The notes under the pieces are model-generated. The model was not told the DNA's origin, searched no databases, and saw only the letters and a program-made list of their open reading frames with translations. Of a stretch of DNA of 64,000 nt, positions 2,717 to 64,000 are shown piece after piece. Every line of letters starts with the position of its first letter. Within the stretch, counting starts at the first letter, position 1. The DNA lies in sequence record MK308675.1; one strand, written 5' to 3'. The position numbers and the translations under genes are program-made.

Positions 2717-2793
2717 TTTGTGTTCCTCTGTTTAAATTAGTCATTTTCAATCTCCTGGTACATTGAATTTTGACCGAATGTTATTTATGATAA

Positions 2794-10661: not shown

Positions 10662-11126
10662 ATGAACTACATGCAATATCATCCGATAGACGTGGTGAAC
10701 GGTGACGGTACTCGCTGTACTCTCTTTGTAAGTGGCTGCGCACATATGTGCAAGGGCTGCTACAATGAAGGTACTTGGAAGACTAATGCCGGTCATCCTT
10801 TCACTCAGGAACTAGAAGACCAAATCATTAAAGACCTTAATGACGAGCGTATCAAGCGCAGAGGCTTATCTCTAAGCGGCGGTGACCCACTGCACCCTAA
10901 GAACGTTTCGACCGTTCTGAAGCTAGTACAGCGCGTTAGAGCAGAGTGTCCTGGTAAAGACATTTGGGCTTGGACGGGTTATACGCTAGGTGAACTTTCC
11001 GAAGAACAGAAAGAAGTAGTAGACTTATTGGATGTCCTCATCGATGGGAAGTTTGAAGAAGATAAGAAAGACCTCATGTTGAAGTGGCGAGGTTCTTCTA
11101 ACCAAATCATTCACGTCTTTAAATAA
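10662..11126 (+). CDS. nrdG: Anaerobic ribonucleotide reductase activating protein (radical SAM)
   Basis: DVVNG.GTRCTLFVSGCAHMCKGCYN (CxxxCxxC), GLSLSGGDPL, DIWAWTGY, WRGSSNQ. Confidence 0.95.
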   Translation: MNYMQYHPIDVVNGDGTRCTLFVSGCAHMCKGCYNEGTWKTNAGHPFTQELEDQIIKDLNDERIKRRGLSLSGGDPLHPKNVSTVLKLVQRVRAECPGKDIWAWTGYTLGELSEEQKEVVDLLDVLIDGKFEEDKKDLMLKWRGSSNQIIHVFK

Positions 11127-12281: not shown

Positions 12282-12294
12282 AAAAATAAGATAG

Positions 12295-12320
12295 CTCCTC
12301 CTAGCCTAAGCTAGGAGGAG
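12295..12320. terminator. Bidirectional terminator
   Basis: Perfect 11-bp stem between convergent genes. Confidence 0.8.
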
Positions 12321-12329
12321 TATTATCTA

Positions 12330-21091: not shown

Positions 21092-21298
21092 TTATAGTCT
21101 GTTTAACCAGTACCACAATAGGAGATAACCTACTGTGGGCAGGATAACGCCAGAACTAATGGCAGCTACGCCGACCGACTTTGCAAAGAAGCCGGAAAGC
21201 TGGATAATCTCGAAGCCGTGGATGACCTGAGTTAATCCTTTATATAGCCACCAAAAGAACTGGACAAACAGAGTTAAAGATTTACCGAGCATACGCAT
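21092..21298 (-). CDS. Small hydrophobic membrane peptide (68 aa)
   Basis: Start re-called after SD GAGGAG; hydrophobic, Trp-rich segments. Confidence 0.65.
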   Translation of the reverse strand: MRMLGKSLTLFVQFFWWLYKGLTQVIHGFEIIQLSGFFAKSVGVAAISSGVILPTVGYLLLWYWLNRL

Positions 21299-21387
21299 CA
21301 GAAATCTCCTCATCAGGAGTAAGCCCTCGCCCTAAGGACGCTCGAACGTCCTTAGGGCATTCTGCTTTTTATCTAAAGCATCGGTAT

Positions 21388-21400
21388 GGTAATATAGGTT
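21388..21400 (-). promoter_or_regulatory. phiKZ-type early promoter AACCTATATTACC
   Basis: Exact copy of the 13-mer. Confidence 0.7.
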
Positions 21401-26136: not shown

Positions 26137-26425
26137 AGTAAATGGGGTTTCTATCTGCACTAAGATAGAAAGAGTAGTCATTGGGGACTATGGCGCTTAT
26201 GTGGAAATAGCACCCGATAACTTCATGGGCCCAATGGATGTCGCTAAAGGACAAGAGTGGCGTTTAGATAAGGACTACATCGAGCGAGCCGGACTGAGCA
26301 TTAAGTACTTGTGGTATGAGTGTTTAGGTAAGAAGCTTTACTTCCAACTGGATACCGTGAAGTATGCCGATTATAAGCCTGGCTTTTATTACATTTCCGT
26401 ACTAGATTTTGATAAGGTGAAATAA
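26000..26425 (+). CDS. Hypothetical protein
   Basis: 141 aa; SD GAGG. Confidence 0.7.
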   Translation: MFTLKSYLDALGKHRKYRPLPKSLKGRHYAVYARALNSFPQRESFKVNGVSICTKIERVVIGDYGAYVEIAPDNFMGPMDVAKGQEWRLDKDYIERAGLSIKYLWYECLGKKLYFQLDTVKYADYKPGFYYISVLDFDKVK

Positions 26426-36969: not shown

Positions 36970-37179
36970 CCACAAAACATTTAAAAACATCTCCTGGGAT
37001 TTCTTTTTTCATTCCTTTTAGGTTACGACTTTCTAGTAACCAACAATTCTTTTATACTATAACCCTTTTCCTTTTTTCCTGTGAGAAGTGCTATACGTTT
37101 TTCCCTAACTATACCACTATTGCGCTCTTATTGATAAATGATAAGATTCTTCAAACCTTTCTCTGTCGAGGGGCAAAGA

Positions 37180-39183: not shown

Positions 39184-39209
39184 TCCCTCTAGTCCTAGGA
39201 CTAGAGGGA
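39184..39209. terminator. Bidirectional terminator (near-perfect palindrome)
   Basis: 12-bp stem around TA between convergent genes. Confidence 0.8.
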
Positions 39210-45113: not shown

Positions 45114-45130
45114 AAAGAAAAATAAGATAG

Positions 45131-45155
45131 CTCTCCTCTGCATTGCAGAGGAGAG
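45131..45155. terminator. Bidirectional terminator
   Basis: 11-bp stem; flanks shared with 12295. Confidence 0.8.
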
Positions 45156-45161
45156 TATTAT

Positions 45162-49607: not shown

Positions 49608-50888
49608 TTAACCTCTTAAATATTTGCGAACGAAATCTACTTCGTTAGTTGCAGTGTTGAGTACCTTATGGCGCAGAATGTGATTACAGGCTTGTAGCTG
49701 GGCCTTATGAATGAGGTCCGGCACAGACTTCTTGTTAGCGCAGTTTTCTGCAATCGACTTTGAGTCCACGCCCTTGAGTTGTTCAACGGCCTCAAAGAAC
49801 AAGTAGACTTGCTCATAGCGCTTACTTTCAAACTCTGCGATTTCTTCCCGCTTGTGTCCTCGGCCTCGAGCATCTGAGATACACACCGCCATGGTGCCCG
49901 CCAATAAGCGAGGGTTCTGAACCGCACGGTGCTCTCGAATAATCTCTAAGAGTTTCTTCTTAGTTATTTGAGAACCTTTGGTCGTCGACTGGTGAATCTT
50001 AGTGTGGTTCTTACAGGCAACTAGCGCTAGCTTACGATATTGACTAGGCACTTTCCAGTCATCGCAGAACTTCTCGATTAAAGGAAGGCCCACCTCAGCA
50101 TGACCGTAAGCATTGCCTCGTTCTCTATAGCAAGAAGGCTTCCCAATGTCGTGTAGGAACGCGGCTAACGTGACTTTAGGACAACCGAAGACCTTAGCTG
50201 CATAGTCCGTGACAAGTCTCGTATGGTTCGCTACGTTGCCTTCTGGGTGGTGTTCTAGATTCTGAGGTGTATCTTCATATTCTCCCCATAGACCATAAGC
50301 ACCGACATCAGAAAGGAACTTGAAGAACGTAGAAATAGAACCGCCATGGACGATAACCTTTTCGAGTTCTCGCCACCAACGTTCCCGTGATACTTCTTCT
50401 AGATGCTCAGAAGCGATACGACATTCGCGGTAAAGTTCTGCTGTAGGCTCTAGGTCATAAAGAGCTAAGAAGCGAGCAGCACGCAGGACACGAAGTGGGT
50501 CTTCATGGAAATGTTTACCGATAGGACGTAGCATGCGTTGCTCTACGTCTTTAATGAAACCATGTGGGTCGATGAACTCTTCTTTCTCTTCGTCATACGC
50601 GATAGCATTGATGGTGAAGTCACGGCGCAACAGGTCCTCTTCTAACGTAACGCCTTCCCAGTTACAATCGAAGCCAGTATGACCTACACCTTCTTTCTTA
50701 TCAGTGCGGGCAAGGGCGTGCTCGTCACCGTACGCATCCATAAAGACAGGGAAGTCTTTACCGATTTGTATAAAGCCTTGACGGACCATCGAAGTAGGGG
50801 TTTCATTAATAACCACGTAGTCCACGTCTTTAGGTTCAAGTCTCATTAACTTATTGCGGCACCAGCCACCTACTATATATTTTTCCAT
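49608..50888 (-). CDS. cca: CCA-adding tRNA nucleotidyltransferase with HD domain
   Basis: VGGWCR, KDVDYVV, GKDFPVF, EDLLRRDFTINA, EDPLRVLRAARF, HHPEG, HDIGK. Confidence 0.92.
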   Translation of the reverse strand: MEKYIVGGWCRNKLMRLEPKDVDYVVINETPTSMVRQGFIQIGKDFPVFMDAYGDEHALARTDKKEGVGHTGFDCNWEGVTLEEDLLRRDFTINAIAYDEEKEEFIDPHGFIKDVEQRMLRPIGKHFHEDPLRVLRAARFLALYDLEPTAELYRECRIASEHLEEVSRERWWRELEKVIVHGGSISTFFKFLSDVGAYGLWGEYEDTPQNLEHHPEGNVANHTRLVTDYAAKVFGCPKVTLAAFLHDIGKPSCYRERGNAYGHAEVGLPLIEKFCDDWKVPSQYRKLALVACKNHTKIHQSTTKGSQITKKKLLEIIREHRAVQNPRLLAGTMAVCISDARGRGHKREEIAEFESKRYEQVYLFFEAVEQLKGVDSKSIAENCANKKSVPDLIHKAQLQACNHILRHKVLNTATNEVDFVRKYLRG

Positions 50889-50940
50889 TTTGAAAATCCT
50901 TAATAAAGCCGTAGTCTAAAACAGACTACGGCAGGGATGA

Positions 50941-51495
50941 TTAATCTGCTCCAGGAGGAGGCGTTTGTAGTGTGTACTCTGGCTGGTACCCGTTACCGTT
51001 AGTTCCGTCGAAAACTCGACGCTCCATCTTGGCGTTGTCGTCTCCAACGAAAAGTCTGTGATGGTTTCTTCTGTCGTTCTTTGGAGGAATCATTTCCGAA
51101 GACATGTCTTCCACGTAGTCCTTAGGCGGTTTTTCGTTAGACTCAAACTCTTCCTTGCGATATGGTTCCAGTAACGCGTTCGCAATCACCGATACTGCCG
51201 CATAAGCACCTTCTTCTTTCATGTTCATGCGAGCAATATCTTCTGCGTCTTTCGGCATAGCGTTTTGGATTTTCTCCAGTTCGTCCACAATGGGGCGAAG
51301 CTTCGCTAATGCTTTGGCCACAGATACGGTAGCGTTGGTGTTGATATATAGAGACTGGTTAACCATCTCGCGATAACGCTTCTTATAGTGCGCTGCACGT
51401 TTCTTGGCTTTAGATGTGGTTAGGTAATGTGAGATTGCCCAACCGACCATGATACCGGCACCCGAGAACAATACAGCCATTATTGATTCATTCAT
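50941..51495 (-). CDS. Membrane-anchored hypothetical protein
   Basis: N-terminal TM segment, coiled coil, C-terminal GNGYQP...PPPG. Confidence 0.65.
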   Translation of the reverse strand: MNESIMAVLFSGAGIMVGWAISHYLTTSKAKKRAAHYKKRYREMVNQSLYINTNATVSVAKALAKLRPIVDELEKIQNAMPKDAEDIARMNMKEEGAYAAVSVIANALLEPYRKEEFESNEKPPKDYVEDMSSEMIPPKNDRRNHHRLFVGDDNAKMERRVFDGTNGNGYQPEYTLQTPPPGAD

Positions 51496-52361
51496 TATAG
51501 TTTACCTGTTGCTTTAAAGAGGAAATTGATTTCGGTAAGTTTAGTGTTGACAGAATCAATTCTGAACTGACCGTCGGGTAGGAAGTAAATAGATGCCACT
51601 TCGACATCGACGCAATCTTCCGTACTAAAGAAACGCTTAATGGTTTCACCTTGGACCGGATGCTCCACTGAAGCTGAGAGCATTTCCAGACGAGCAACTT
51701 CAGAAGGTCTGCGAGTGGACTGAATGCTAACATCTTCCAGGTTAATATTGTTCTTGCCTCCAGGCCAGTGAATGTACTGACCCATTAGCTCAAACACATT
51801 CCCCTGAACCGGTCCGCCGTTACGTACAGCTAGGGTGTAAGGGATAGTAAATTCCGGAGTTTCCTGTTTGACAATCTGCATCTTGAAGTCAAATGCGTCG
51901 AGGCCATCTGTACGAACGTAACTATGTTCGCCTTTTCGATTGAAACATAAAAAGGTACCTGGGCAACTAGAATACCGAGATACGACCGTAGACCGTGGAG
52001 CCGTCTGTAGTGCGGCAGGTAGACGAGAATCTTCGACGATGATTCGGATACCGAAGACATTTAGTAATGCCTCCATATTTCCGCCTTTGGCTTGGAATAG
52101 TTGCTTATCGACAACTAGAATCTCGGGTGGATTTTCGATGATGTCTTGTGGCGATTTGTAACCCATCACGTTCTCGGTAAAGTAGCCGATGCGTTTTAAG
52201 GCGTGCTTGTGAGCTAGGAGTTCCGACAGATGTAGGGCTAACTGCGAAGTACCTGAAAAGGTATCTCCTAGGACCCGATAAAGGCGCTGTTTACCTAAAG
52301 CCTTCGCGTTGAAGGACGTCTTTACAGTTGTTTTAGTTTGCGAAAGAAATGTGCTGTTCAT
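51495..52361 (-). CDS. Hypothetical protein, possibly a degenerate P-loop
   Basis: GDTFSGTS and ILVVD. Confidence 0.6.
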   Translation of the reverse strand: MNSTFLSQTKTTVKTSFNAKALGKQRLYRVLGDTFSGTSQLALHLSELLAHKHALKRIGYFTENVMGYKSPQDIIENPPEILVVDKQLFQAKGGNMEALLNVFGIRIIVEDSRLPAALQTAPRSTVVSRYSSCPGTFLCFNRKGEHSYVRTDGLDAFDFKMQIVKQETPEFTIPYTLAVRNGGPVQGNVFELMGQYIHWPGGKNNINLEDVSIQSTRRPSEVARLEMLSASVEHPVQGETIKRFFSTEDCVDVEVASIYFLPDGQFRIDSVNTKLTEINFLFKATGKL

Positions 52362-52434
52362 GAGATAGACTCCGGCATAATTACGTTTATAAGCGATTGG
52401 TCTTTACGTGACCTAACGATGTAACATGACGCAG

Positions 52435-52914
52435 TTACGGGCGAATGCGTTTAAAGTCATCGCGGACTTTCTGGATGTAGACAACATCATATCGATAGAC
52501 ACTTCGTAGAATGTCTACAACTGAGTCTAGCCACACTTCGAGAATTTCGCGAGGATACTTCTCTGTTTCAAAGGCGGCTTGTTTACATATCCATTCCATG
52601 TGAGCGACAGCAGATGCGTCGTTCTTAGAAAGGTTTCTTACCGAGGCTTTCGCTGCTTGCTTAGATGCCAGTTTAATATGGTCCAGTAAGAAGTATGCGA
52701 AAAGGTTTGTTGCATTAGCGTGGATGGTCTGGTAAATAGGTCGCTTACATTTGCGACATTTATAGCCAGGCTTAACTGCGGGGTCTTCATAGCTGTACTG
52801 AAACAACATGAGTTGGCGAGTCTCACAATCAGGACACTCTAACTCACGTCGGTTCATGACGGCACCTAGGTAGTCGCGATAGACTGCTCCGTTAAATAAA
52901 GTTTGGTCTAACAT
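52435..52914 (-). CDS. Zn-ribbon-containing hypothetical protein
   Basis: CPDC...CRKC. Confidence 0.65.
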   Translation of the reverse strand: MLDQTLFNGAVYRDYLGAVMNRRELECPDCETRQLMLFQYSYEDPAVKPGYKCRKCKRPIYQTIHANATNLFAYFLLDHIKLASKQAAKASVRNLSKNDASAVAHMEWICKQAAFETEKYPREILEVWLDSVVDILRSVYRYDVVYIQKVRDDFKRIRP

Positions 52915-52951
52915 ATAGTCTCCTATCTAAAAAATTTTAAGATAAGGTTTA

Positions 52952-52983
52952 TTATCCCTCTGCTCCTAAGAACAGAGGGATAA
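52952..52983 (-). terminator. Terminator
   Basis: 11-bp stem. Confidence 0.7.
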
Positions 52984-52986
52984 GGC

Positions 52987-53844
52987 TTAGCTGATGCGCA
53001 AGTAAGTTACGCCCGTAGCGTTTCCACCGGCATACCCGATGCGGTTTGCTGAAGGGTCGTACGTCAAGAACAGCTCTTTGACTTCTTCATCTTCGTAGTA
53101 CTGGTCTTTATAGAACATCTTGATGTTGCCTGCATCGTAGATGAGTTCTTTGAACCACATCGGTTTCTGTTCTAAGCGGTAGCCGCCAGGAATGTCGTCA
53201 TCCACATCGTTATCGCGAAGGTCGTCTTCGCCCATAAGCACATCTTCAAAGAAGCGTAACTCAACGATATCCGCTGGGTTGCCGTCCATGTGGTAAGATT
53301 GCTCACGAAGATTCATCTCGCCGTGTAAACGATAAGACGTATTCTTTCTCGCGGGAATCACAGCCGTTGCAATGTGCGCATATTCGCCAGACAGATAAAG
53401 TTCTGACTTTTCTGAAGACGCAGTACATTCTTGCTGAATGTAGCCGTGCAGTACGTTGGTCATAGAAGAATCTGTAACCACGATAATGTGTTTCTTCTCT
53501 AGCTGTTTGCGATAGCGATTAAAGAACTCAAAGTTACGTTCGATACGTAGGTCCAGAATAAAGATGTCGTAAGCGCTAGCCACGATTTCTTCGGACTGGT
53601 CTTCCCACATGCGCTCACTGCCGCTATGGAAGATAAGTTTAGGTGTGCCTTTAGCATCGAAGTATTCCGCTAGACGGAAACCTGCCGCTTGTGCCCAACT
53701 CCACTGACCGCAATGTTTTTCGCCGGTGAACTCTAGTTGAGCAGGGAAGTCAGGGTCTTGCACCATGATTTCCATGTAGCGAGTACCTAAAGCATTGAAG
53801 GTATCAAAGAAGAACATTGCGCGGGCGATGTTTAAGAATTTCAT
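52987..53844 (-). CDS. Hypothetical protein
   Basis: 285 aa. Confidence 0.75.
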   Translation of the reverse strand: MKFLNIARAMFFFDTFNALGTRYMEIMVQDPDFPAQLEFTGEKHCGQWSWAQAAGFRLAEYFDAKGTPKLIFHSGSERMWEDQSEEIVASAYDIFILDLRIERNFEFFNRYRKQLEKKHIIVVTDSSMTNVLHGYIQQECTASSEKSELYLSGEYAHIATAVIPARKNTSYRLHGEMNLREQSYHMDGNPADIVELRFFEDVLMGEDDLRDNDVDDDIPGGYRLEQKPMWFKELIYDAGNIKMFYKDQYYEDEEVKELFLTYDPSANRIGYAGGNATGVTYLRIS

Positions 53845-53892
53845 AACGTCCTCGTTAATAAAGTTAAATAAGAATAGTCAGATTAGCAGTCT

Positions 53893-53905
53893 GGCTATAT
53901 AGGTT
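53893..53905 (-). promoter_or_regulatory. Variant early promoter AACCTATATAGCC
   Basis: 11/13 match to the early motif, upstream of a minus-strand gene. Confidence 0.5.
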
Positions 53906-53907
53906 TA

Positions 53908-55059
53908 TTATCCTCTTCGCTTACGCGTTTCGTGTAAGTTTTGAAGAGCCAGTTTAACAGCGTGGCGGGCACCAGAGATTTTCTCTTCGCAGCCGAAACT
54001 GATGTCGATGCCTTCATTGTCGCAGCCGAACTTCCCAGCTGACTTCAGAACGCCATCGCCGCGAGATTTTACTGACCAACGTCTCCAGCGTTTCTCTCCA
54101 GGCCAACGACTCCATGTTTGTTTGTACTCCGTCATGTACACGTCGAACCAAACACGCTCCATCGGATAGCCTTCGCAGTACAAGGAAGTTTCTAAGATAG
54201 CGTCAATGTGCGTGCCACCGTCATCTACGATATCGTCTCGGCCTTTAAGTAGTCGCTCCCAACTGAGGTAATGGTGTAAGCCTCTCCATCCGTCCGTATT
54301 TCCGCAATCATCATAGAAGAACGTACTCACCATATGTTCTTTACACATGTAGAAGCCCGTAATACGAGACTCGCGAACTAAGTAACTTAGGAAAGGTAGT
54401 TCCGCTGAGAAGTATCCGCCGAACAAAACGAAGTTAAAACGTAGACTGAAGTTTGTCTCATCACCGTAGCCCGTATAAACTTCAAAACGTGGCCAACCTG
54501 GCCCTTCCCAGCCCCACTCCAAGCGTAGGTCGCCTAAGTGTAAGTAACATTCATTGGTGTTCTTAACTCGGTGGAACCATATGGCATCTTTACAGCGCTG
54601 CCACAGCGTCATGCGCTTACCTTTCTCCACGGGAACTACGATGCGATGCAGAGACTTGTGTAAGGCCCAAACTCCACAGAACCCATAAACGATGAGCTGT
54701 AGGTTAAAGATGAGTAAATCGATTATAGGCAAGTAGCTCCCGTCCATACCGCACATTCGCGCGATTACCGCAAGTACTACCAGGTAGCCGAAAACTTCTC
54801 TGGGTTTCTGACGACTATAAGAACTAGTCTCTCTTACTGACCCTAGGGTTACCAGCGAGGCCAATAGAAGCCATGCGGTATAGACCATCAGGGACTCAGG
54901 GGAAACGATACCGAGATACGGCACATACTCGCGCCCCATGAAGTAAGTAATCGCCATATCCCAGCCAACATCCATTACAGAGAACAACAACATTAAGAAA
55001 AAGGCGAACGTTGACGCAGCTTGGAACGTCGCCCCTTTCTCTTTAAATAGGTTAAGCAT
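53908..55059 (-). CDS. Multi-pass membrane protein with soluble C-terminal domain
   Basis: About four N-terminal TM segments. Confidence 0.7.
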   Translation of the reverse strand: MLNLFKEKGATFQAASTFAFFLMLLFSVMDVGWDMAITYFMGREYVPYLGIVSPESLMVYTAWLLLASLVTLGSVRETSSYSRQKPREVFGYLVVLAVIARMCGMDGSYLPIIDLLIFNLQLIVYGFCGVWALHKSLHRIVVPVEKGKRMTLWQRCKDAIWFHRVKNTNECYLHLGDLRLEWGWEGPGWPRFEVYTGYGDETNFSLRFNFVLFGGYFSAELPFLSYLVRESRITGFYMCKEHMVSTFFYDDCGNTDGWRGLHHYLSWERLLKGRDDIVDDGGTHIDAILETSLYCEGYPMERVWFDVYMTEYKQTWSRWPGEKRWRRWSVKSRGDGVLKSAGKFGCDNEGIDISFGCEEKISGARHAVKLALQNLHETRKRRG

Positions 55060-55144
55060 TTCTTATCTCCTTAGTTTATTACCAATAGATTTTAAGCGAG
55101 GGTTAAAAGTAACAAGGCCCTGTCCGAAGACAGAGCCCTGCTGT

Positions 55145-55795
55145 TTATTTCATGTACGGTTTAAATTCCGTCCAGTGTACCGGAAACTCCGGCAGTAGGT
55201 TAAGCGTATCTAAGGTATAGATTAGCGAACGTCCTGTCATTTCACCGGCCTCGAAGAACTGCACGAGCTTTAACGCAGCAGCATATAAGAGGTCCTTGCC
55301 TTGACTCTGCCACGGCACAGATACTGTTTCGAAGGTACTTCTTCCGTCTTCTAGGAAAGACAGGTTAATACTCTTGTCAGTTAAATGTACTTCGGCGAGA
55401 CGCAGACTCTCCGCCTTAGGGTAGGAAAGTATCAGTTCTAAACTAGCTTTTACTTTTTCTACTCGGGCAGGTAAAGTCTTGTACGCGGTATTTAGAGGAG
55501 AACACATTAGCTGCCCTCCTTTTAGTTCTATCCCAAATGAGCCAGAAGAACGGCCCATCGTGAACGCAATTTCAGTTACGTTTTCATTAGTGTGGTGTTT
55601 GACTCCGTGAGCTGGGTTCTCACCTACGACCGGCACGACGTCAATCTTTTCCACAGCAACTAAAGCGATTGAAAAGTTATTAGCGTCTGCGGGAACATTG
55701 TTTAACACACACGGTTCTTGTGCTAAGTCAATGCTCCCACCGTCGATGGGTAAGTCCAACTCTAAAAACGTACGTTTTGTCGAACGAGTTTTCAT
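55145..55795 (-). CDS. Hypothetical protein
   Basis: 216 aa; SD AAGGAG. Confidence 0.7.
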   Translation of the reverse strand: MKTRSTKRTFLELDLPIDGGSIDLAQEPCVLNNVPADANNFSIALVAVEKIDVVPVVGENPAHGVKHHTNENVTEIAFTMGRSSGSFGIELKGGQLMCSPLNTAYKTLPARVEKVKASLELILSYPKAESLRLAEVHLTDKSINLSFLEDGRSTFETVSVPWQSQGKDLLYAAALKLVQFFEAGEMTGRSLIYTLDTLNLLPEFPVHWTEFKPYMK

Positions 55796-55823
55796 TGTTG
55801 TTCTCCTTGTAAAGTCATAGGAT

Positions 55824-58285
<2,462 letters not shown>

Positions 58286-58287
58286 GA

Positions 58288-58737
58288 CTATCTCCTCGGG
58301 AAGTTACGGAGAGCGTAGTCGTCATAGACTCCGCCGAATATCCAGCTATTAAGGACGCCGGTATAGAACAGACATAAGCTTGACGCAAAGTCATTGGCCA
58401 ATGTCGTATCTTCTCCGTAGAAGGTTAAATAAGTAATACCTCCGGCACAACAAGCCAGAGCGATTAAGATGATTCCGCGACGAGTTTCCCACTTCCCTAG
58501 CTGAGTGTCCTCACCTACTGCGGAGCCTCCTTCTCCATTAACGTGGTTGTCTGTAGCTGCACCGAACACATAGCCGGCGATTACTAGAGCACACATTAAA
58601 AGGAGAGAAGAGGCTAGCGTGGCATGGAGAGAAGATTCGCCTTCTCCCCAGCCTAACAGATACAGTAAGATGAAGGCAGCCCAACTTAGAGATAGCTTAA
58701 TCGTGAGACGTCGCATACCCCAGTTTGCTTTAGACAT
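58288..58737 (-). CDS. Internally duplicated 4-TM membrane protein (holin-like)
   Basis: Two copies of W..RR...TM..G.....A..TM..FG...D. Confidence 0.55.
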   Translation of the reverse strand: MSKANWGMRRLTIKLSLSWAAFILLYLLGWGEGESSLHATLASSLLLMCALVIAGYVFGAATDNHVNGEGGSAVGEDTQLGKWETRRGIILIALACCAGGITYLTFYGEDTTLANDFASSLCLFYTGVLNSWIFGGVYDDYALRNFPRR

Positions 58738-59059
58738 CTATGTCTCCTGTTTCTATTTTGAAGAACTCCGCTTCATGCGGGACTAGCTCTTGGCTACCAT
58801 AGGGACCGGTTTCTGCCAACGTTTTAATTCGTCTGGCGAACTCGGCTGGCCAGCGGACAATCATCTGCTTTATGGCGTAGAGTGCAGCTAGGTCATCAGG
58901 ACAACTAGAGGCCAACGCATAGCAATCGACTAACGCCTGAAGCTGTTCCTCTAGCGTTTTGTCGCCACCTGGAATCGACGGAAACTCAGTACCGAGATAG
59001 GCACAGACTTCGAAGTACCGCTTTACTGTTTTGGTTGTTACGCGAACATTAACAGTCAT
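58730..59059 (-). CDS. Hypothetical protein
   Basis: 109 aa. Confidence 0.7.
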   Translation of the reverse strand: MTVNVRVTTKTVKRYFEVCAYLGTEFPSIPGGDKTLEEQLQALVDCYALASSCPDDLAALYAIKQMIVRWPAEFARRIKTLAETGPYGSQELVPHEAEFFKIETGDIDV

Positions 59060-59068
59060 GTGTATTCC

Positions 59069-59983
59069 TTAGTCTTCGCCTTTACGGTTCACGGTAAGTG
59101 TATATTCGCCCACCGTGCGCGCAGAGTTCGTCCAGCAGTTAGTTTCCCAATCCATCGGACGGTCGCCCAGAAGCCTGACCATGTCTTCCTGAGAGAAATC
59201 TACGAACGTCATTCCGTTTTCACGTCTCTCTCGCAGGCTGACGCATAGCACTTTTTCAGCGACTGAAGTGAACCCACCTTCCTTAAACCGAGGACGCCAA
59301 TAATCTTCAACGTCTACGTAAACATCAAAGACTGTGTCAGTTGGCTTATGTGAAAGCGTAATTTTAAGGGCATCTGTTCCGACAGCCGTCTTACTCCAAA
59401 TTCGGAAGAAGTCCCACATGTCGACCACGAGGCGCCGTACGCTTTCCTTAGAGACCCATCCCGGAACACCACTATGCTTAAGGCGCATTGAACGCGCTTG
59501 AGTCGCACGGTGTGCTAGTTCCGCCATAGACAGTACTTCGTTACCGCCAGGTACGTTGTGTGTCTCTAACATCAGACCAGCGTGGTTACAGCTAAACGCA
59601 CGAGGCTTCCCTTCTTCATCGGCTTTCCAGCCTTTATGCAGCGGATAAGGCGGAACACCCGCAACGTCTTGATAGAGCATGCGCGCTAGGTTATACTCCA
59701 TTTCGTCACGGACGAAAATGGTTGTTTCGTATAAGCTCTTAGGAATTACCGGGTGTCCATCTTTCATCTCAGAAGGACATTCGCGTTTTAGCCAGCGGTC
59801 TTTAAAATGCTTACTCATAACCACTTTAATGTTCTGTGCCTCTTCTTCACTTAGCTCTACGCCAAGCAGGTCTGACAATGTTTCTGACGGTACGATAGCG
59901 TCCATTGCCATTTCCATAAACTGCATGTAGTCCGAACATGCTTTGTTTAGTATTTCACCGCGCTCTGTATTTACTGAAGTCAT
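59069..59983 (-). CDS. Hypothetical protein
   Basis: 304 aa. Confidence 0.75.
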   Translation of the reverse strand: MTSVNTERGEILNKACSDYMQFMEMAMDAIVPSETLSDLLGVELSEEEAQNIKVVMSKHFKDRWLKRECPSEMKDGHPVIPKSLYETTIFVRDEMEYNLARMLYQDVAGVPPYPLHKGWKADEEGKPRAFSCNHAGLMLETHNVPGGNEVLSMAELAHRATQARSMRLKHSGVPGWVSKESVRRLVVDMWDFFRIWSKTAVGTDALKITLSHKPTDTVFDVYVDVEDYWRPRFKEGGFTSVAEKVLCVSLRERRENGMTFVDFSQEDMVRLLGDRPMDWETNCWTNSARTVGEYTLTVNRKGED

Positions 59984-59987
59984 TTTA

Positions 59988-60710
59988 TCACCAATCTAAC
60001 TTTTCTGCTTGTTTAAGGATTTTCTTGCGCGCCAGGTCCGTACGGATAATAGAAGAAAGTTCGTCTGGTCCTAACTTCATATCTTCTAAGCACTGGCCGT
60101 GGTAGCTACATTCCATCTGAGGACTTTCTAGCGTACCTTTGTTTACTACGCGCTCGAACGGGTCTTTACGTTCGTCTGCGCACTTAGGGCAGCCAATGCG
60201 TTCAATCTCTTTACCTAGTAAAGAAACCTGAATCTGCATCGCTAGGATGTCCGTGGCTGGGTTCTGAATTTCTAACAGGGTGTTAACGAACTCGCCTAGT
60301 TCTTCCTCCCCAGAAATGAAAGGTTTAATGTGGTTACACTTAGCACATTGCTTAGTTAACTCTACGCGACCGGGTTCGTGCTTGAATAAAGGAACCATCT
60401 TACCGCCTTCACATTCAGTACAAGGCGTGTTCATATTAATGAACTCTAGATGTATTTTCTTCAGTGCCACTTCTTCAAAGAAGGTTTCTGCTTTCTCAGC
60501 AGAGAGCTGCAACACATGGTTCGATGAAGTAATCCACGTTTCGGACACACCATTCAATTCTTGCGTGGTGTGGCGACAAACAGAATGACAATTCGTGCAG
60601 CTAAACACACTTATAGTGTCGTCTTCCTTGCCATTCATGTCATAAGACGCATCCAGGGATAGTGCATGGGTTTCGCAGTTCTTACACATTAAGTCTTCGT
60701 AGACGCTCAT
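59988..60710 (-). CDS. Multi-Zn-ribbon protein
   Basis: CKNC/CTNC, CTEC/CAKC, CPKC/CSYHGQC. Confidence 0.65.
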   Translation of the reverse strand: MSVYEDLMCKNCETHALSLDASYDMNGKEDDTISVFSCTNCHSVCRHTTQELNGVSETWITSSNHVLQLSAEKAETFFEEVALKKIHLEFINMNTPCTECEGGKMVPLFKHEPGRVELTKQCAKCNHIKPFISGEEELGEFVNTLLEIQNPATDILAMQIQVSLLGKEIERIGCPKCADERKDPFERVVNKGTLESPQMECSYHGQCLEDMKLGPDELSSIIRTDLARKKILKQAEKLDW

Positions 60711-61240
60711 AGTTCCTCCGTCAGGAATTCAATTTTGTTTCGGAATCCCGACGTTAGGATTTCGATGTTAGAAGAATACTTCTTAATGCGACCGAATTCA
60801 CCAGTCTCAATAGAAGCGTTTAAGTTACGTGAACTATCAGCCACCTTAACGATGCGGGTAACCGGGCGGCGCTTGAGCATTACCATCTGTCCTTCATAAG
60901 GCTTGCCGCCTAAGATGTTCGCGTAATCGATTAAGTCAGGATGCACACCCATTTCGCGTAAATAGGTTTGACATTCCCAATGGTGCTCTACAGCATCATG
61001 GATGTAGCCTAAAGCTTTCAAGAAGAAAGAGGCATCGCGAGGTAAAGCCTTCTCTACCATGGAAAAGACCGCTTCGCCTACATCACGTACGTGGTAGCTA
61101 AATGGTGCGTTGCCGTATTTCTCACCCGCATGTATTTCTAAAGCTAGGCGAAAACAAAGTGCGGCTTGTTGGGAAGGCTGGTACTTCTTACCTTCTCCCC
61201 AATCTTCGGGCACCCAAGTAATCAATTTAGGGTCAATCAT
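60707..61240 (-). CDS. RelA/SpoT-type HD hydrolase (small alarmone hydrolase/Mesh1-like)
   Basis: A.EIHAG..YG..PFSYH..DV...IHDAVE...VKVAD..RNL. Confidence 0.7.
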   Translation of the reverse strand: MIDPKLITWVPEDWGEGKKYQPSQQAALCFRLALEIHAGEKYGNAPFSYHVRDVGEAVFSMVEKALPRDASFFLKALGYIHDAVEHHWECQTYLREMGVHPDLIDYANILGGKPYEGQMVMLKRRPVTRIVKVADSSRNLNASIETGEFGRIKKYSSNIEILTSGFRNKIEFLTEEL

Positions 61241-61968
61241 TTTTCCCTCATCTCCTTTATGCGTTGTTCTGCGACCTCATCCCAACTAGGCATCTGAGCT
61301 ATCGCACCTTTAGTAGACATGGCCCATATATAAGAACTCTCACGCTGGTTCTCATCAAAGCCTTCTAAAGAACCGTGCCTTAAGATGTAACGAGCACGGT
61401 AGTAATCGCGTACGCCAAAACCTTCAACAGGGTCCGGGCACACGGCTTGGTCTAAATATTTGAAGTAGTCAGATACGCTGTCGTCAATGACCACCCAGCG
61501 TTTAATAGATGGGTTCTCACGGAGATAGTCGTCTACGCCTTGCTCTCTTGAACTTAACTCCGTACCATACCTTTCTTCGATGCGCCACGGCTCACCTTCG
61601 CCTTTATTGCGTAAAGTGATAGAACTAAAACCAAAGGCCTCATGTAGCTTACTCGCGGCCAGCAGAGTCTTCATGTGACTCTTCCATACCGAGACATAAA
61701 CTATGCGAGCATTGTACTCTTTGGCTAGGCGATTAATGAGACCTACGGCATAAGGGTCTATGCGTAAACCCATTAAGTGAGCTCGCTCTGTCTGCACGAC
61801 TTCGTCCACATCTAAGAAGATAACTGCTTCACCGTCTCTTTGCTCGTCCATTATGTTTGCGAACGCAGAACGGAAAGCATTCTCGTAACCGTTAGCCAAC
61901 ATGTCTACAAGTTCGGGGTTCTCTCTTAGAAGTTCTTCGTACTTCTTTATTTCTTCGTAATAATCCAT
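61237..61968 (-). CDS. HAD-family phosphatase (Swiss-army-knife RNA-repair-like)
   Basis: IFLDVDEV, VSVW, REQGVDDYL, WVVIDD, DPVEGF. Confidence 0.75.
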   Translation of the reverse strand: MDYYEEIKKYEELLRENPELVDMLANGYENAFRSAFANIMDEQRDGEAVIFLDVDEVVQTERAHLMGLRIDPYAVGLINRLAKEYNARIVYVSVWKSHMKTLLAASKLHEAFGFSSITLRNKGEGEPWRIEERYGTELSSREQGVDDYLRENPSIKRWVVIDDSVSDYFKYLDQAVCPDPVEGFGVRDYYRARYILRHGSLEGFDENQRESSYIWAMSTKGAIAQMPSWDEVAEQRIKEMREK

Positions 61969-62011
61969 CTGACCTCCTTTCTATTAAATCCGGATTTAGG
62001 GTTAATAAAGA

Positions 62012-62035
62012 CAGGAGAAGCCGAAGCCTCTCCTG
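62012..62035 (-). terminator. Terminator with UUCG loop
   Basis: Core identical to 7768-7789. Confidence 0.75.
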
Positions 62036-62043
62036 GTTTATTA

Positions 62044-63030
62044 TTAATGTGAACTACGGTACTTGCGCACCATTAATGACGGGAATATGTAATCTGCATC
62101 TAGTAAAGACGGATGCCACATTATCCACGCTCTAGACTTTCCTAGATGGCGAGCCATGTCTGTTTGGAAGCGACTACCTTCATGCCAGTGGTCCGTAGAA
62201 TAGTAGTTAGTTAGCGTAGGTAACTCACGCTTCTTCCGACAATCTCGAGCAGCGCAAGAAGCCATGAGCTGAGTTTGCCAAGTAGCTAGGCCGTGGCGCG
62301 AATGCTCTATGTTGTCGACCGTTAGTCTTGCTGGGCTAAGACTGCGACACTGATTTATCGCCACCTCGTTATCATGTGAAGGCCAGTAATGTAAAGATTC
62401 CGTACCATTCTTCTTGGCCTTCTGTTCGAAACCACCGTAGAGAACAGTGTCAGCTATTTGAACGAGGTCCAGGTGGTCGGACATAGAGTAATCGAAAGCT
62501 TCGAATAGCCATTCAGGAACCGCTATAATCTTCTTCTTCAACATGGAATTGAAGTGATGTTCCGTTATCGTGCGGTTCGACTCCAGATAGACTTGAGTCA
62601 CGTTAGTCTCAAAGAGGAGCGTATGTAACTCTAGTCCTAAACCCCATATCGTCTTACCGTCTTGTCGACCAGCTTGGAACCATACGTCTTCGAGGTGGTT
62701 GTCTACAGCATAAAGAATACCTAGTGTCTCTGTGCTGATTTTAAAGGGCAGGTATTCAGAGAGGCCCGGGTTATAGACTCGCAGTACCTCTCTAAAGAAA
62801 TAGGTTTTATTTTCACGACACTCGAAAAAGATAATGCCTTTTTCTTGGTCAGTTAAATCTTCGGACCAAGGGTCTAGCCCTATTGTTTCAGGGAACTTAA
62901 CCCGTAAAGGATACTTGTAGTTTCCCACACGCATCTCTCTTAAAGTTTCCGAGAGAATGTTAAAGGAATGGTTAGAGGTCCCCGGATAAGAATACTCGCC
63001 GGCATTCGGATTGAAAGGTTTCAGTTGCAT
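62044..63030 (-). CDS. Truncated, degenerate paralog of the phiKZ-type terminase large subunit ATPase domain
   Basis: N.SF..L...L.....LDP...L...I..EC.EN..YFFREV.RV and RQDGKT; no nuclease domain. Confidence 0.6.
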   Translation of the reverse strand: MQLKPFNPNAGEYSYPGTSNHSFNILSETLREMRVGNYKYPLRVKFPETIGLDPWSEDLTDQEKGIIFFECRENKTYFFREVLRVYNPGLSEYLPFKISTETLGILYAVDNHLEDVWFQAGRQDGKTIWGLGLELHTLLFETNVTQVYLESNRTITEHHFNSMLKKKIIAVPEWLFEAFDYSMSDHLDLVQIADTVLYGGFEQKAKKNGTESLHYWPSHDNEVAINQCRSLSPARLTVDNIEHSRHGLATWQTQLMASCAARDCRKKRELPTLTNYYSTDHWHEGSRFQTDMARHLGKSRAWIMWHPSLLDADYIFPSLMVRKYRSSH

Positions 63031-63118
63031 TGTTTTAACTCCGTCGTTAAACAAACTAAGGCGCGATTGCCATTCTATTCTCAGGGAGAATAAAAAATAA
63101 AAGATGAGGTAAAGAAAG

Positions 63119-63138
63119 AGGGAGGCCGAAGACTCCCT
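63119..63138 (-). terminator. Terminator with UUCG loop
   Basis: AGGGAGTC-TTCG-GCCTCCCT then CTTTCTTT on the minus strand. Confidence 0.75.
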
Positions 63139-63144
63139 TATAGT

Positions 63145-63207
63145 TTAGCAGCCTGAAGAGCCACGGCCACAGCCGCCAGGCAGTACAATACTAAAGTTTG
63201 ATAACAT
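63145..63207 (-). CDS. 20-aa micropeptide MLSNFSIVLPGGCGRGSSGC (absent from the ORF track)
   Basis: SD GGAG-AAAACA-ATG, TAA stop, terminator 7 nt after the stop. Confidence 0.6.
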   Translation of the reverse strand: MLSNFSIVLPGGCGRGSSGC

Positions 63208-63222
63208 TGTTTTCTCCGTGTT

Positions 63223-63510
63223 TTAAAGGACGTATTCTTGACCTTCTTCGAGGCCGTGTGGCTGTTCAGTGATTAGGTAAGCTTGACGATTAACGAAGTA
63301 ATGTCCCGGGACTACCAGCACGTTATCGTTTTCGTCGTCGATGTAAACGGTTAAGATATATTGGTTGCCTTTTTGACGTAAGACTTCGTCTACCTTTGCG
63401 TCGAGAACTGGCCAGCCGTAAACGGTCCCGTCGTACTCAACACCTTCGCCGTTCGGACAAGAAACTAGCCCCTTAGTTAATAGGTATTCAAGGATGTCAT
63501 CGATTTCCAT
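63223..63510 (-). CDS. Small phage protein
   Basis: 95 aa; G.Y.VNR..Y.ITE.P motif; directly after the early promoter. Confidence 0.75.
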   Translation of the reverse strand: MEIDDILEYLLTKGLVSCPNGEGVEYDGTVYGWPVLDAKVDEVLRQKGNQYILTVYIDDENDNVLVVPGHYFVNRQAYLITEQPHGLEEGQEYVL

Positions 63511-63541
63511 AGGGTTTTCCTCTTACATTGATATTCACATA

Positions 63542-63554
63542 GGTAATATAGGTT
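63542..63554 (-). promoter_or_regulatory. phiKZ-type early promoter AACCTATATTACC
   Basis: Exact copy of the 13-mer. Confidence 0.7.
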
Positions 63555-63564
63555 ATAGTTTGCT

Positions 63565-63577
63565 CTGAATCTTGTAG
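63565..63577 (+). promoter_or_regulatory. Candidate late promoter CTGAATCTTGTAG
   Basis: Same motif and spacing as 21411. Confidence 0.5.
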
Positions 63578-63624
63578 GGACGCTGTTCCTATAATGAACG
63601 TTCATTTTAATCGGGATTAAAGTT

Positions 63625-64000
63625 ATGTACGATAACAAAATCATTAGACTCGCACGTTATGCGGGAGAAGACTTAGAATTCATGCCGTGGTTCTTTGTGG
63701 ACGACGACAGCGGAGTTACTCAGAAGGAAATCCCTGAGTTTAAGAATACGCTTTCGTTTGACGCGAACGATATCTGCGAGAAAGAAGGTAAACTGTACTA
63801 CACAGAAGAAGCCTTAGCTCCGGCAGACTGGGACGACACTAAGTGGAAGGAAATCGCTGTAGTGTTGGCTTACTTAAACAACCACAAGACTTATCTGGAA
63901 TACGAACTTGACTCTTTCGTTCTTCACGAAGACGTCATCTATAAGAACAACAAAGTAGTGTCTGGAGAGTTCAACAGTGCCGACTGGGACGAAGTAGATG
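63625..64000 (+). CDS. Putative virion protein with CBM5/12-like repeats, running off the right edge (absent from the ORF track)
   Basis: Hand translation MYDNKIIRLARYAGED...FDANDICEKEGKLYY..A..WDDTKWKEI...YELDSFVLHEDVIYK...FNSADWDEV, open to the edge. Confidence 0.65.
   Translation, partial: MYDNKIIRLARYAGEDLEFMPWFFVDDDSGVTQKEIPEFKNTLSFDANDICEKEGKLYYTEEALAPADWDDTKWKEIAVVLAYLNNHKTYLEYELDSFVLHEDVIYKNNKVVSGEFNSADWDEVD

What the first reader, a model, noticed from the sequence alone, without database searches (positions are those of the whole stretch)
63119..63554. Hidden 20-aa Gly/Cys micropeptide gene with a complete expression unit
Seen: early promoter (63542) -> 95-aa gene -> GGAG SD -> MLSNFSIVLPGGCGRGSSGC (63207-63145) -> UUCG terminator. 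It is below the ORF-track cut-off but has its own SD and is the last cistron of the unit. A hydrophobic leader plus a G/S/C-rich core recalls RiPP precursors (microcin B17/SCIFF-like GGCG), but no maturase is nearby. The two Cys could form a disulfide loop or metal site. Inference: an immediate-early peptide inhibitor, or a host-modified peptide, possibly partnering the 95-aa protein.
Basis: partly seen in the sequence, partly recalled or inferred. Interest (0 to 1): 0.7.

Follow-up and report, generated by a model that had tools for sequence, protein, structure and literature searches.

The report
Unannotated 20-codon ORF in phage early operon
A jumbo Vibrio phage carries a previously unannotated 20-codon gene-like ORF with strong translation signals at the end of a short early transcription unit. 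It has no relatives anywhere, so its function, and the suggested RiPP-like role, remain unsupported.

Summary

The signals exceed chance. Of 465 intergenic ATGs in the 290-kb genome, this one has the best ribosome-binding-site score. It is also the only intergenic ORF longer than 10 codons that ends just before a terminator. None of 20,000 shuffles of the gap reproduced the combination.

I therefore think it is probably a translated second cistron (about 0.6). Nothing supports the functional ideas:
- The peptide and the 95-aa protein have no homologue in phages, IMG/VR, metagenomes, 185,000 genomes or 15 billion proteins.
- The four known genomes are 100% identical, so conservation cannot be tested.
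- No RiPP maturase lies nearby and no precursor family matches.
- Codon usage is uninformative.

The Gly/Cys core is a run of six NGY triplets, which looks like a decayed GGC repeat. The ORF is also in frame with the 95-aa gene across a single TAA, so a truncated C-terminus remains a rival. Interest is modest.

The parts
63565..63570 (-). Upstream promoter element ATTCAG, about 20 nt upstream of the core
   Evidence: ATTCAR or close variants recur at the same distance upstream of TATATTAC at several of the 14 genomic sites. The literature reports conservation at -10, -20 and -30 in phiKZ / 201phi2-1 early promoters.
63542..63554 (-). Early-promoter core AACCTATATTACC (phiKZ-type TATATTAC), followed by TATGTGAA
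   Evidence: CTATATTACC occurs exactly 3 times in the window, always intergenic and on the minus strand. TATATTAC occurs 14 times in the genome, always on the minus strand. It matches the phiKZ / 201phi2-1 consensus.
63223..63510 (-). 95-aa ORFan gene (QAX96284.1), first cistron
   Evidence: Annotated CDS. Found only in Yong phages: tblastn, 5.8 billion proteins, 1.84 billion representatives (whose only other hit is a repeat-summation artefact). No family match.
63214..63217 (-). GGAG Shine-Dalgarno, 6 nt before the ATG and 5 nt after the 95-aa stop
   Evidence: The context CACGGAGAAAACA-ATG resembles annotated genes such as CAGGAGAAACAAA-ATG.
63145..63207 (-). 20-codon micro-ORF MLSNFSIVLPGGCGRGSSGC plus TAA
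   Evidence: Best RBS score among 465 intergenic ATGs genome-wide. Shuffle test. Identical in all four Yong genomes. In frame with the 95-aa gene (63510-63207 = 303).
63160..63177 (-). Run of six NGY triplets, GGCGGCTGTGGCCGTGGC, in the ORF frame; part of a 33-nt island with 73% GC
   Evidence: One of three such runs in the genome, and one of four intergenic 33-nt windows with at least 70% GC. Tandem Repeats Finder reports nothing.
63119..63138 (-). Hairpin terminator AGGGAG-U-C[UUCG]G-C-CUCCCU, starting 6 nt after the micro-ORF stop
   Evidence: Free energy -8.5 kcal/mol. Belongs to the purine-arm/CTTCGG/pyrimidine-arm subclass seen in 9 of 70 terminators of this genome.
63089..63118 (-). T-rich tail after the hairpin (CTCTTTCTTTACCTCATCTTTTATTTTTTA)

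Best explanation
The ORF at 63207-63145 (minus strand) is a real, unannotated second and last cistron of a short early transcription unit of the phiKZ-like jumbo phage vB_VmeM-Yong.

Proposed sequence of events:
- A virion-RNA-polymerase-type early promoter (ATTCAG-N12-CCTATATTACC) starts a transcript about 25 nt upstream of the 95-aa ORFan gene.
- Ribosomes finishing that gene at TAA, or binding afresh at the GGAG 6 nt before the ATG, translate 20 codons.
- They stop 6 nt before a short cUUCGg hairpin terminator that ends the unit ahead of the TerL-like gene.

Shown: the signals exist, are gene-like for this genome, and are far beyond chance.

Inferred: early timing, actual translation, and termination at this hairpin.

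The product is a lineage-restricted 20-aa peptide. Its N-terminal half (LSNFSIVLP) is hydrophobic. Its Gly/Cys/Arg/Ser C-terminal half looks derived from a decayed GGC-type triplet run, so it is probably an evolutionarily young gene. If the peptide itself acts, the most likely mode is a small cytoplasmic early binder of a host or phage protein, not a modified natural product. I put translation at about 0.6-0.7 and an independent peptide function at about 0.3.
For: RBS matrix built from annotated or called genes:
- 7.21 bits in the window, above 70% of 81 genes and 2nd of 2,202 non-gene ATGs.
- 7.41 bits genome-wide, rank 1 of 465 intergenic ATGs. An annotated 40-aa gene that my gene set had missed reappears at rank 5, which serves as a positive control.

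Geometry:
- 63 of 94 intergenic terminator hairpins start no more than 16 nt after a same-strand stop (56 of them at 4-16 nt). This one starts 84 nt after the 95-aa stop but 6 nt after the micro-ORF stop.
- It is the only intergenic ORF of more than 10 codons ending 0-16 nt before a terminator.
- In the shuffle test, ORF plus RBS at or above the median real gene occurred in 0.09% of shuffles, and RBS of 7 bits or more in 0 of 20,000.

Other points:
- Folding energy around the start is typical of real genes, -5.0 against a median of -5.1 kcal/mol.
- The 73%-GC stretch is one of only four such intergenic islands in 20 kb of intergenic DNA, and its triplet periodicity is in the ORF frame.
- The promoter motif is recurrent, strand-specific and matches published early promoters.
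- The hairpin belongs to a recognisable terminator subclass of this phage. Its energy lies inside the range of mapped 201phi2-1 terminators, -6.9 to -19.3 kcal/mol.
- The smallest annotated CDS in the genome is 39 aa, so the annotators' pipeline would have missed it.
Against: - There is no conservation evidence. The peptide occurs only in four Yong genomes that are 100% identical over 20 kb.
- Searches of IMG/VR, metagenomes and genomes were empty or gave chance hits.
- It is absent from a 15-billion-protein collection.
- The locus is not syntenic in BONAISHI or sm033.
- Codon usage is uninformative. The log-likelihood ratio is 1.55 bits, at the 14th percentile of in-frame windows and the 79th to 94th percentile of open non-coding frames.
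- The terminator is the second weakest of 70.
- About 10 other terminator-like hairpins sit 31-150 nt after a stop without any such ORF.
- No experimental data were available.
Confidence: 0.6

Rival explanations
1. The stretch is a non-coding 3' UTR of the 95-aa gene. The ORF and its Shine-Dalgarno-like GGAG are chance features, and any translation is noise.
For: About 10 other terminator-like hairpins in this genome lie 31-150 nt after a stop. An open frame of this size ending there arises in 7.2% of shuffles. Codon usage does not discriminate. There is no conservation.
Against: It has the best RBS context of all 465 intergenic ATGs. The joint probability with the ORF geometry is below 0.1% per gap. 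The GC-rich, triplet-periodic sequence is atypical of this phage's AT-rich intergenic DNA. RNA folding shows no significant structure that would explain the sequence otherwise (z = -0.75), and no Rfam family matches.
Confidence: 0.2
2. The ORF is the severed C-terminus of the 95-aa gene. It lies in the same frame with only one TAA between them, so an ancestral gene of about 121 codons acquired a nonsense mutation, or the TAA is occasionally read through.
For: 63510-63207 = 303, a multiple of 3, and no other stop lies between the two ORFs. The gene-to-terminator geometry would then be normal for a single gene.
Against: Being in frame has a 1-in-3 chance. None of the in-frame internal ATGs of annotated genes in the window reaches this RBS score; the best is 6.55. 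The genome has no tRNA gene and so no phage suppressor. All four genomes carry the TAA. No homologue of the 95-aa protein exists with which to compare lengths.
Confidence: 0.1
3. The act of translating the ORF matters, not the peptide. A ribosome stopping 6 nt before the hairpin would cover its 5' arm and modulate termination or read-through into the TerL-like gene, or protect the 3' end of the mRNA.
For: The stop-to-hairpin distance is 6 nt. The hairpin is weak. The next gene follows 88 nt further on the same strand.
Against: The same 4-16 nt geometry holds for most genes of the phage, so it is not special to this ORF. In phiKZ-like phages transcription is thought to be physically separated from translation (established knowledge; not tested for this phage), which argues against coupling.
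Confidence: 0.07
4. The ORF is a RiPP-like precursor (microcin B17, SCIFF or methanobactin style) matured by phage or host enzymes.
For: Only the G/S/C-rich composition after a hydrophobic N-terminus.
Against: No Pfam or NCBIfam precursor family matches. No maturase lies within about 5 kb. The stretch ahead of the Gly/Cys core is about 10 residues. The core is explained by an NGY triplet run. No similar peptide exists in any collection searched.
Confidence: 0.03

Closest known systems
Unannotated small ORFs (smORFs, 50 codons or fewer) in bacterial and phage genomes
   Same: Below the annotation cut-off, carries its own Shine-Dalgarno, lies in an operon, and is lineage-restricted. This class is widely reported from ribosome profiling and comparative catalogues (for example PMC11364881, PMC11188072, PMC5345727).
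   Different: Catalogue smORFs are usually supported by conservation or Ribo-seq data. This one has neither and rests on sequence signals alone. At 20 codons it is at the very short end.
phiKZ / 201phi2-1 early transcription units (early promoter TATATTAC, small hypothetical genes, hairpin terminators)
   Same: Same core motif and the same downstream GTG. The motif is expected about 10 bp upstream of the transcription start. Early promoters precede hypothetical genes, and intrinsic terminators of -6.9 to -19.3 kcal/mol are reported.
   Different: Different host and lineage: a Vibrio phage whose relatives are BONAISHI and pir03. No transcriptome exists for it, and the upstream element ATTCAR is this phage's own variant.
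Very short phage or plasmid-encoded peptides with a function of their own, such as T4 Stp (26 aa) and MccA (7 aa) (recalled from my own knowledge, not tested)
   Same: They show that peptides of 26 aa or fewer can be genuine, functional gene products expressed from compact units.
   Different: No sequence similarity. MccA needs the adjacent MccB-E genes, which are absent here. Stp's role is defined genetically, and nothing comparable is known here.
Microcin B17 (McbA) / SCIFF RiPP precursors
   Same: Gly/Ser/Cys-rich composition.
   Different: Those precursors are 45-69 aa with long leaders and sit next to their maturases. Here there are 20 aa, 2 Cys, no maturase and no family match.

Membership tests
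Protein-coding cistron of this phage (operational definition) | Shine-Dalgarno 4-11 nt before an ATG, in a context like annotated genes | tested here: met
   GGAG at a spacing of 6 nt. Matrix score 7.2-7.4 bits, in the top 30% (window) to 10% (genome) of real starts and the best of 465 intergenic ATGs.
Protein-coding cistron of this phage (operational definition) | Codon usage like the phage's genes | tested here: inconclusive
   Log-likelihood ratio 1.55 bits, between the coding (5.1 +/- 3.2) and non-coding open-frame (-1.9 to -4.0 +/- 4) distributions.
Protein-coding cistron of this phage (operational definition) | Frame and start conserved in relatives | not testable with these tools
   Only four 100%-identical genomes exist. 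No relatives in IMG/VR, metagenomes or genomes.
phiKZ-type early (virion RNA polymerase) promoter | TATATTAC core with downstream ..GTG and an A/T-rich upstream region | tested here: met
   AACCTATATTACCTATGTGAA at 63554-63534. Consensus taken from PMC7058600 Table 2.
phiKZ-type early (virion RNA polymerase) promoter | Recurrent in the genome upstream of genes, in the gene's orientation | tested here: met
   14 TATATTAC sites, all on the minus strand. Nine lie 32-105 nt upstream of a minus-strand ORF start.
phiKZ-type early (virion RNA polymerase) promoter | Transcription start about 10 nt downstream, with early timing | not testable with these tools
   No transcriptome of this phage was found.
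Intrinsic (hairpin plus U-tract) terminator | GC-rich stem-loop followed by a T-rich tract | tested here: met
   6 bp, then a 1x1 mismatch, then a C-G pair closing a UUCG loop; -8.5 kcal/mol; tail CTCTTTCTTT. Weak relative to the genome's median of -19.9.
RiPP precursor of microcin B17 / TOMM type | Adjacent cyclodehydratase/dehydrogenase (McbBCD or YcaO) genes | tested here: not met
   Pfam and PHROGs on ten neighbouring proteins found GH18-like, TerL-like, HAD_SAK_2 and HD proteins and unknowns. The genome was not scanned as a whole.
RiPP precursor of microcin B17 / TOMM type | Match to a precursor family, or a leader of about 20 or more residues | tested here: not met
   No Pfam or NCBIfam hit even at E = 10. 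Only about 10 residues precede the Gly/Cys part.
SCIFF (six cysteines in forty-five residues) | About 45 aa with six Cys, next to a radical SAM maturase | tested here: not met
   20 aa and 2 Cys. No radical SAM neighbour. The only radical SAM annotation in the window is the NrdG-type activase at 10662-11126, 52 kb away.
Bacterial lipoprotein signal peptide | Positively charged n-region, h-region, and a lipobox [LVI][ASTVI][GAS]C | tested here: not met
   The sequence before Cys13 is VLPGG: Pro at -3, no Lys or Arg before the Cys, and only 12 residues (read; the lipobox consensus is from established knowledge).

The most novel reading that the evidence does not exclude
A 20-aa Gly/Cys peptide is made within the first minutes of infection from a virion-polymerase early promoter of a phiKZ-like jumbo phage. 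It acts on its own as a host-takeover or anti-defence effector, possibly together with the 95-aa ORFan or after modification by host enzymes. That would make it one of the shortest functional phage gene products, and a young gene born from a triplet-repeat-like sequence.
Probability: 0.12. Interest if true: 0.6.

Novelty: new member of a known kind. Interest (0 to 1): 0.3.

Why it matters
If translated, it adds a gene to a jumbo-phage early unit, the class of genes that takes over the host. It would also show that annotation cut-offs of about 39 aa in this genome hide cistrons that sequence signals alone can recover. The genome-wide method used here picks this ORF out cleanly and could be reused on other phage genomes. 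That method combines an RBS matrix, the stop-to-terminator distance and gap shuffling. With no relatives and no data on function, it does not at present open any long-standing question.

Tried and rejected
Searches for relatives that found nothing:
- Megablast, blastn and tblastn of the locus, the 95-aa protein and the peptide against 50,697 phage records found only the four Yong genomes.
- The search for related loci in IMG/VR, metagenomes and genomes returned nothing.
- Neither the 95-aa nor the 328-aa protein has any relative among 5.8 billion proteins.
- A phmmer search of 1.84 billion representatives gave one extra hit. It is a 1,689-aa protein of about 53-aa repeats whose score is a sum of weak repeat matches, so I rejected it.

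Degenerate DNA patterns for the peptide:
- The C-terminal 11 residues plus stop gave 4 metagenome hits. All lie inside GC-rich unrelated sequence and were rejected as chance.
- The same pattern gave no hit in IMG/VR.
- A pattern for SIVLPGGCGRG gave no hit in genomes or IMG/VR.
- The exact peptide is not in the 15-billion-protein collection.

Synteny:
- The GH18-like neighbour has homologues in BONAISHI and sm033, but in different contexts.

RNA explanations:
- No Rfam match and no tRNA.
- Folding z-score -0.75.
- No internal repeat in the genome and no tandem repeat.

Other negative or unusable results:
- Codon usage is uninformative.
- AlphaFold2 on the 95-aa protein gave pLDDT 41.8, which is unusable, so no fold search was run.
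- PADLOC found nothing.
- The lipoprotein reading (LPGGC) was rejected on lipobox rules.
- The promoter scan for sigma-70 sites found none in 62000-64000, consistent with phage-polymerase promoters.

Full report
**Identity of the window**

The region 62900-63700 is 100% identical to four Vibrio mediterranei jumbo phages, vB_VmeM-Yong XC31, XC32, MS31 and MS32. Window position x corresponds to MK308674.1 position x + 210070. No other phage record matches at DNA level, even with sensitive blastn. The four genomes are 100% identical over the last 20 kb of the window, so they count as one genome.

The Yong phages are relatives of BONAISHI and pir03. They supply the best hits for pir03's phiKZ-like RNA polymerase subunits (PMC7765460), so this is a phiKZ-like jumbo phage.

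**Check of the observation**

- TATATTAC at 63550-63543.
- The 95-aa CDS at 63510-63223 (QAX96284.1, annotated).
- GGAG at 63217-63214.
- ATG at 63207, then 20 codons (MLSNFSIVLPGGCGRGSSGC), with TAA at 63147-63145.
- A hairpin at 63138-63119 with a C[UUCG]G apex and a T-rich tail.

The micro-ORF is not annotated. The smallest CDS in the record has 39 codons.

**The promoter**

CTATATTACC occurs three times in the window, always intergenic and on the minus strand. TATATTAC occurs 14 times in the genome, all on the minus strand. Nine of them lie 32-105 nt upstream of a minus-strand ORF start. The shared context is AACC-TATATTAC-C, often with ATTCAR about 12-14 nt further upstream.

This matches the published early-promoter strings: phiKZ TATATTAC, 201phi2-1 ..BTATATTACDWHDGTG, and EL ..AAACCTACATTAT (PMC7058600 Table 2). 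It also fits the description of an AT-rich early motif about 10 bp upstream of the transcription start that precedes hypothetical genes (PMC11512511). That this is an early promoter is therefore a well-founded inference, although no transcriptome exists for this phage. The sigma-70 scan found nothing in the region.

**Is the ORF more than chance?**

I built a position matrix (-20 to +6) from the 81 annotated starts in the window.
- The micro-ORF start scores 7.21 bits. That is above 70% of real genes and 2nd among 2,202 non-gene ATGs.
- Among the window's 23 intergenic gaps of at least 60 nt, every other intergenic ATG scores negative. The one exception is a 22-codon ORF at 2744-2676.

I then joined the whole phage genome from the fetched loci and called ORFs greedily. 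This recovered 80 of the 81 annotated stops in the window.
- Genome-wide, the micro-ORF has the best RBS score of all 465 intergenic ATGs (7.41 bits, the 90th percentile of ORF starts).
- An annotated 40-aa gene that my ORF set had missed appears at rank 5, which acts as a positive control.

**Terminator geometry**

In the window, all strong intergenic terminators start 4-16 nt after a same-strand stop. This hairpin starts 84 nt after the 95-aa stop but 6 nt after the micro-ORF stop.

Genome-wide, 63 of 94 intergenic terminator-like hairpins start no more than 16 nt after a stop. About 10 lie 31-150 nt away, so a long gap is uncommon but not unique. Of the 465 intergenic ATGs, only six open ORFs that end 0-16 nt before a terminator, and only this one has more than 10 codons.

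In 20,000 dinucleotide-preserving shuffles of the 84-nt gap:
- 7.2% contained an ORF of at least 15 codons ending 0-16 nt before the hairpin.
- 0.09% also had an RBS at or above the median real gene.
- None had an RBS of 7 bits or more.

Folding energy around the start (-5.0 kcal/mol) equals the median of real genes at -5.1.

**Weak points**

- The hairpin is weak: -8.5 kcal/mol against a median of -19.9, weaker than 97% of 70 terminators. It does belong to a recognisable subclass of this phage's terminators, with a purine-rich arm, CTTCGG, and a pyrimidine-rich arm, such as GGAGGCTTCGGCCTCC. It also lies within the energy range of mapped 201phi2-1 terminators.
- Codon usage does not help. The log-likelihood ratio is 1.55 bits, between the coding and non-coding distributions.

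**The peptide and its origin**

The C-terminal half is encoded by GGC GGC TGT GGC CGT GGC TCT TCA GGC TGC.
- The first six codons form a run of six NGY triplets. It is one of three such runs in the genome and the only one outside my called ORFs.
- The 33-nt stretch is 73% GC, one of four such intergenic islands in 20 kb of intergenic DNA.
- All five Gly codons are GGC, although GGC makes up only 37% of Gly codons in the window's 81 annotated genes.
- Cys (TGY) and Arg (CGY) codons are each a single base change from Gly (GGY).

The Gly/Cys/Arg richness that suggested a RiPP core is therefore most simply the trace of a GGC-type triplet run. That points to a young sequence. Tandem Repeats Finder itself reports nothing.

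**Search for relatives**

None was found.
- The peptide has no tblastn hit in phage records outside Yong.
- It matches no Pfam or NCBIfam family and no PADLOC family.
- It is absent from the 15-billion-protein collection.
- Degenerate DNA patterns gave only four chance hits in GC-rich metagenome contigs and nothing in IMG/VR or 185,000 genomes.
- The 95-aa protein is an ORFan. The single extra hit is a repeat-summation artefact.
- The locus is not syntenic in BONAISHI or sm033.
- AlphaFold2 gave an unusable model of the 95-aa protein, pLDDT 41.8.

**Neighbourhood and the RiPP idea**

The ten surrounding proteins are a borderline GH18-like 586-aa protein (divergent), a 328-aa TerL-like paralogue, a HAD_SAK_2 protein, an HD phosphohydrolase, and unknowns. 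None is a maturase. The stretch ahead of the Gly/Cys core is about 10 residues and there are two Cys. Membership of the microcin B17, SCIFF or lipoprotein classes fails on every feature tested.

63510-63207 = 303, so the micro-ORF is in the same frame as the 95-aa gene, with a single TAA and five sense codons between them. The ORF could therefore be a severed C-terminus.

Against this:
- Being in frame has a 1-in-3 chance.
- No in-frame internal ATG of an annotated gene in the window reaches this RBS score.
- The genome has no tRNA gene and so no suppressor.

I give this rival about 0.1.

**Verdict**

The expression-unit reading is supported. The ORF is probably translated (about 0.6). Function is unknown, with at most about 0.3 for an active peptide, and the RiPP reading is unsupported (about 0.03).

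It is a new member of a known kind: an unannotated small ORF in a phage operon. Interest is 0.3.

Noticed in passing
window 62044-63030 (-): The 328-aa gene right after the unit is a paralogue of the N-terminal ATPase part of the terminase large subunit. It is about 26% identical to phiKZ-like TerL proteins and matches a PHROG TerL family. It is 32% identical over 111 aa to the phage's own 716-aa TerL (QAX96101, record 107033-109183), including the Walker-A-like RQxGK motif. It lacks a nuclease domain.
   Followed up: partly
window 2676-2744 (-): A second unannotated small ORF (22 codons, MTNLNRGTQNEKRRYAVDGNTS) has the best RBS score of all non-gene ATGs in the window (8.0 bits). It overlaps the start of the annotated gene 1631-2716 by 41 nt in another frame. 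It could be an upstream or leader ORF, or chance.
   Followed up: partly
window 21329-21397 (-): The early-promoter copy at 21388-21397 is followed about 30 nt downstream by a perfect 12-bp hairpin (GCCCTAAGGACG-TTCGAG-CGTCCTTAGGGC) in the 5' UTR of the 68-aa gene 21092-21298. This resembles the 5'-UTR-derived sRNA or premature-termination arrangement described for 201phi2-1.
   Followed up: no
window 49608-61968 (-): A cluster of RNA/DNA end-repair-type genes: CCA-adding enzyme, NAD+ ligase, an HD phosphohydrolase and a HAD_SAK_2 domain protein. Yet the whole phage genome has no tRNA gene detectable by ARAGORN.
   Followed up: no
whole genome (window plus L003-L008): All 14 TATATTAC sites are on the minus strand. 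Most terminators share a CTCTCC...GGAGAG stem motif (41 of 70), and many sit between convergent genes as two-way hairpins, for example window 12294-12321, 39184-39209 and 45130-45156.
   Followed up: partly
window 26137-26424 and 36970-37179 (+): Two unusually long same-strand intergenic gaps, of 288 and 210 nt, have no good-RBS ORF. The first holds a 66-codon ATG ORF (26225-26425) with a poor RBS that runs into the next gene.
   Followed up: no
MK308674.1 89729-89769, 97996-98034, 98211-98246 (outside the window; L005): These are the only other intergenic 33-nt islands with at least 70% GC in the genome. Their nature was not examined.
   Followed up: no
window 63625-64000 (+), continuing to record 275455: The divergently transcribed 586-aa gene has a borderline Glyco_hydro_18 match (28.7 bits against a cut-off of 29.6). 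It has 36-38% identical homologues in the Vibrio phages BONAISHI and sm033.
   Followed up: partly
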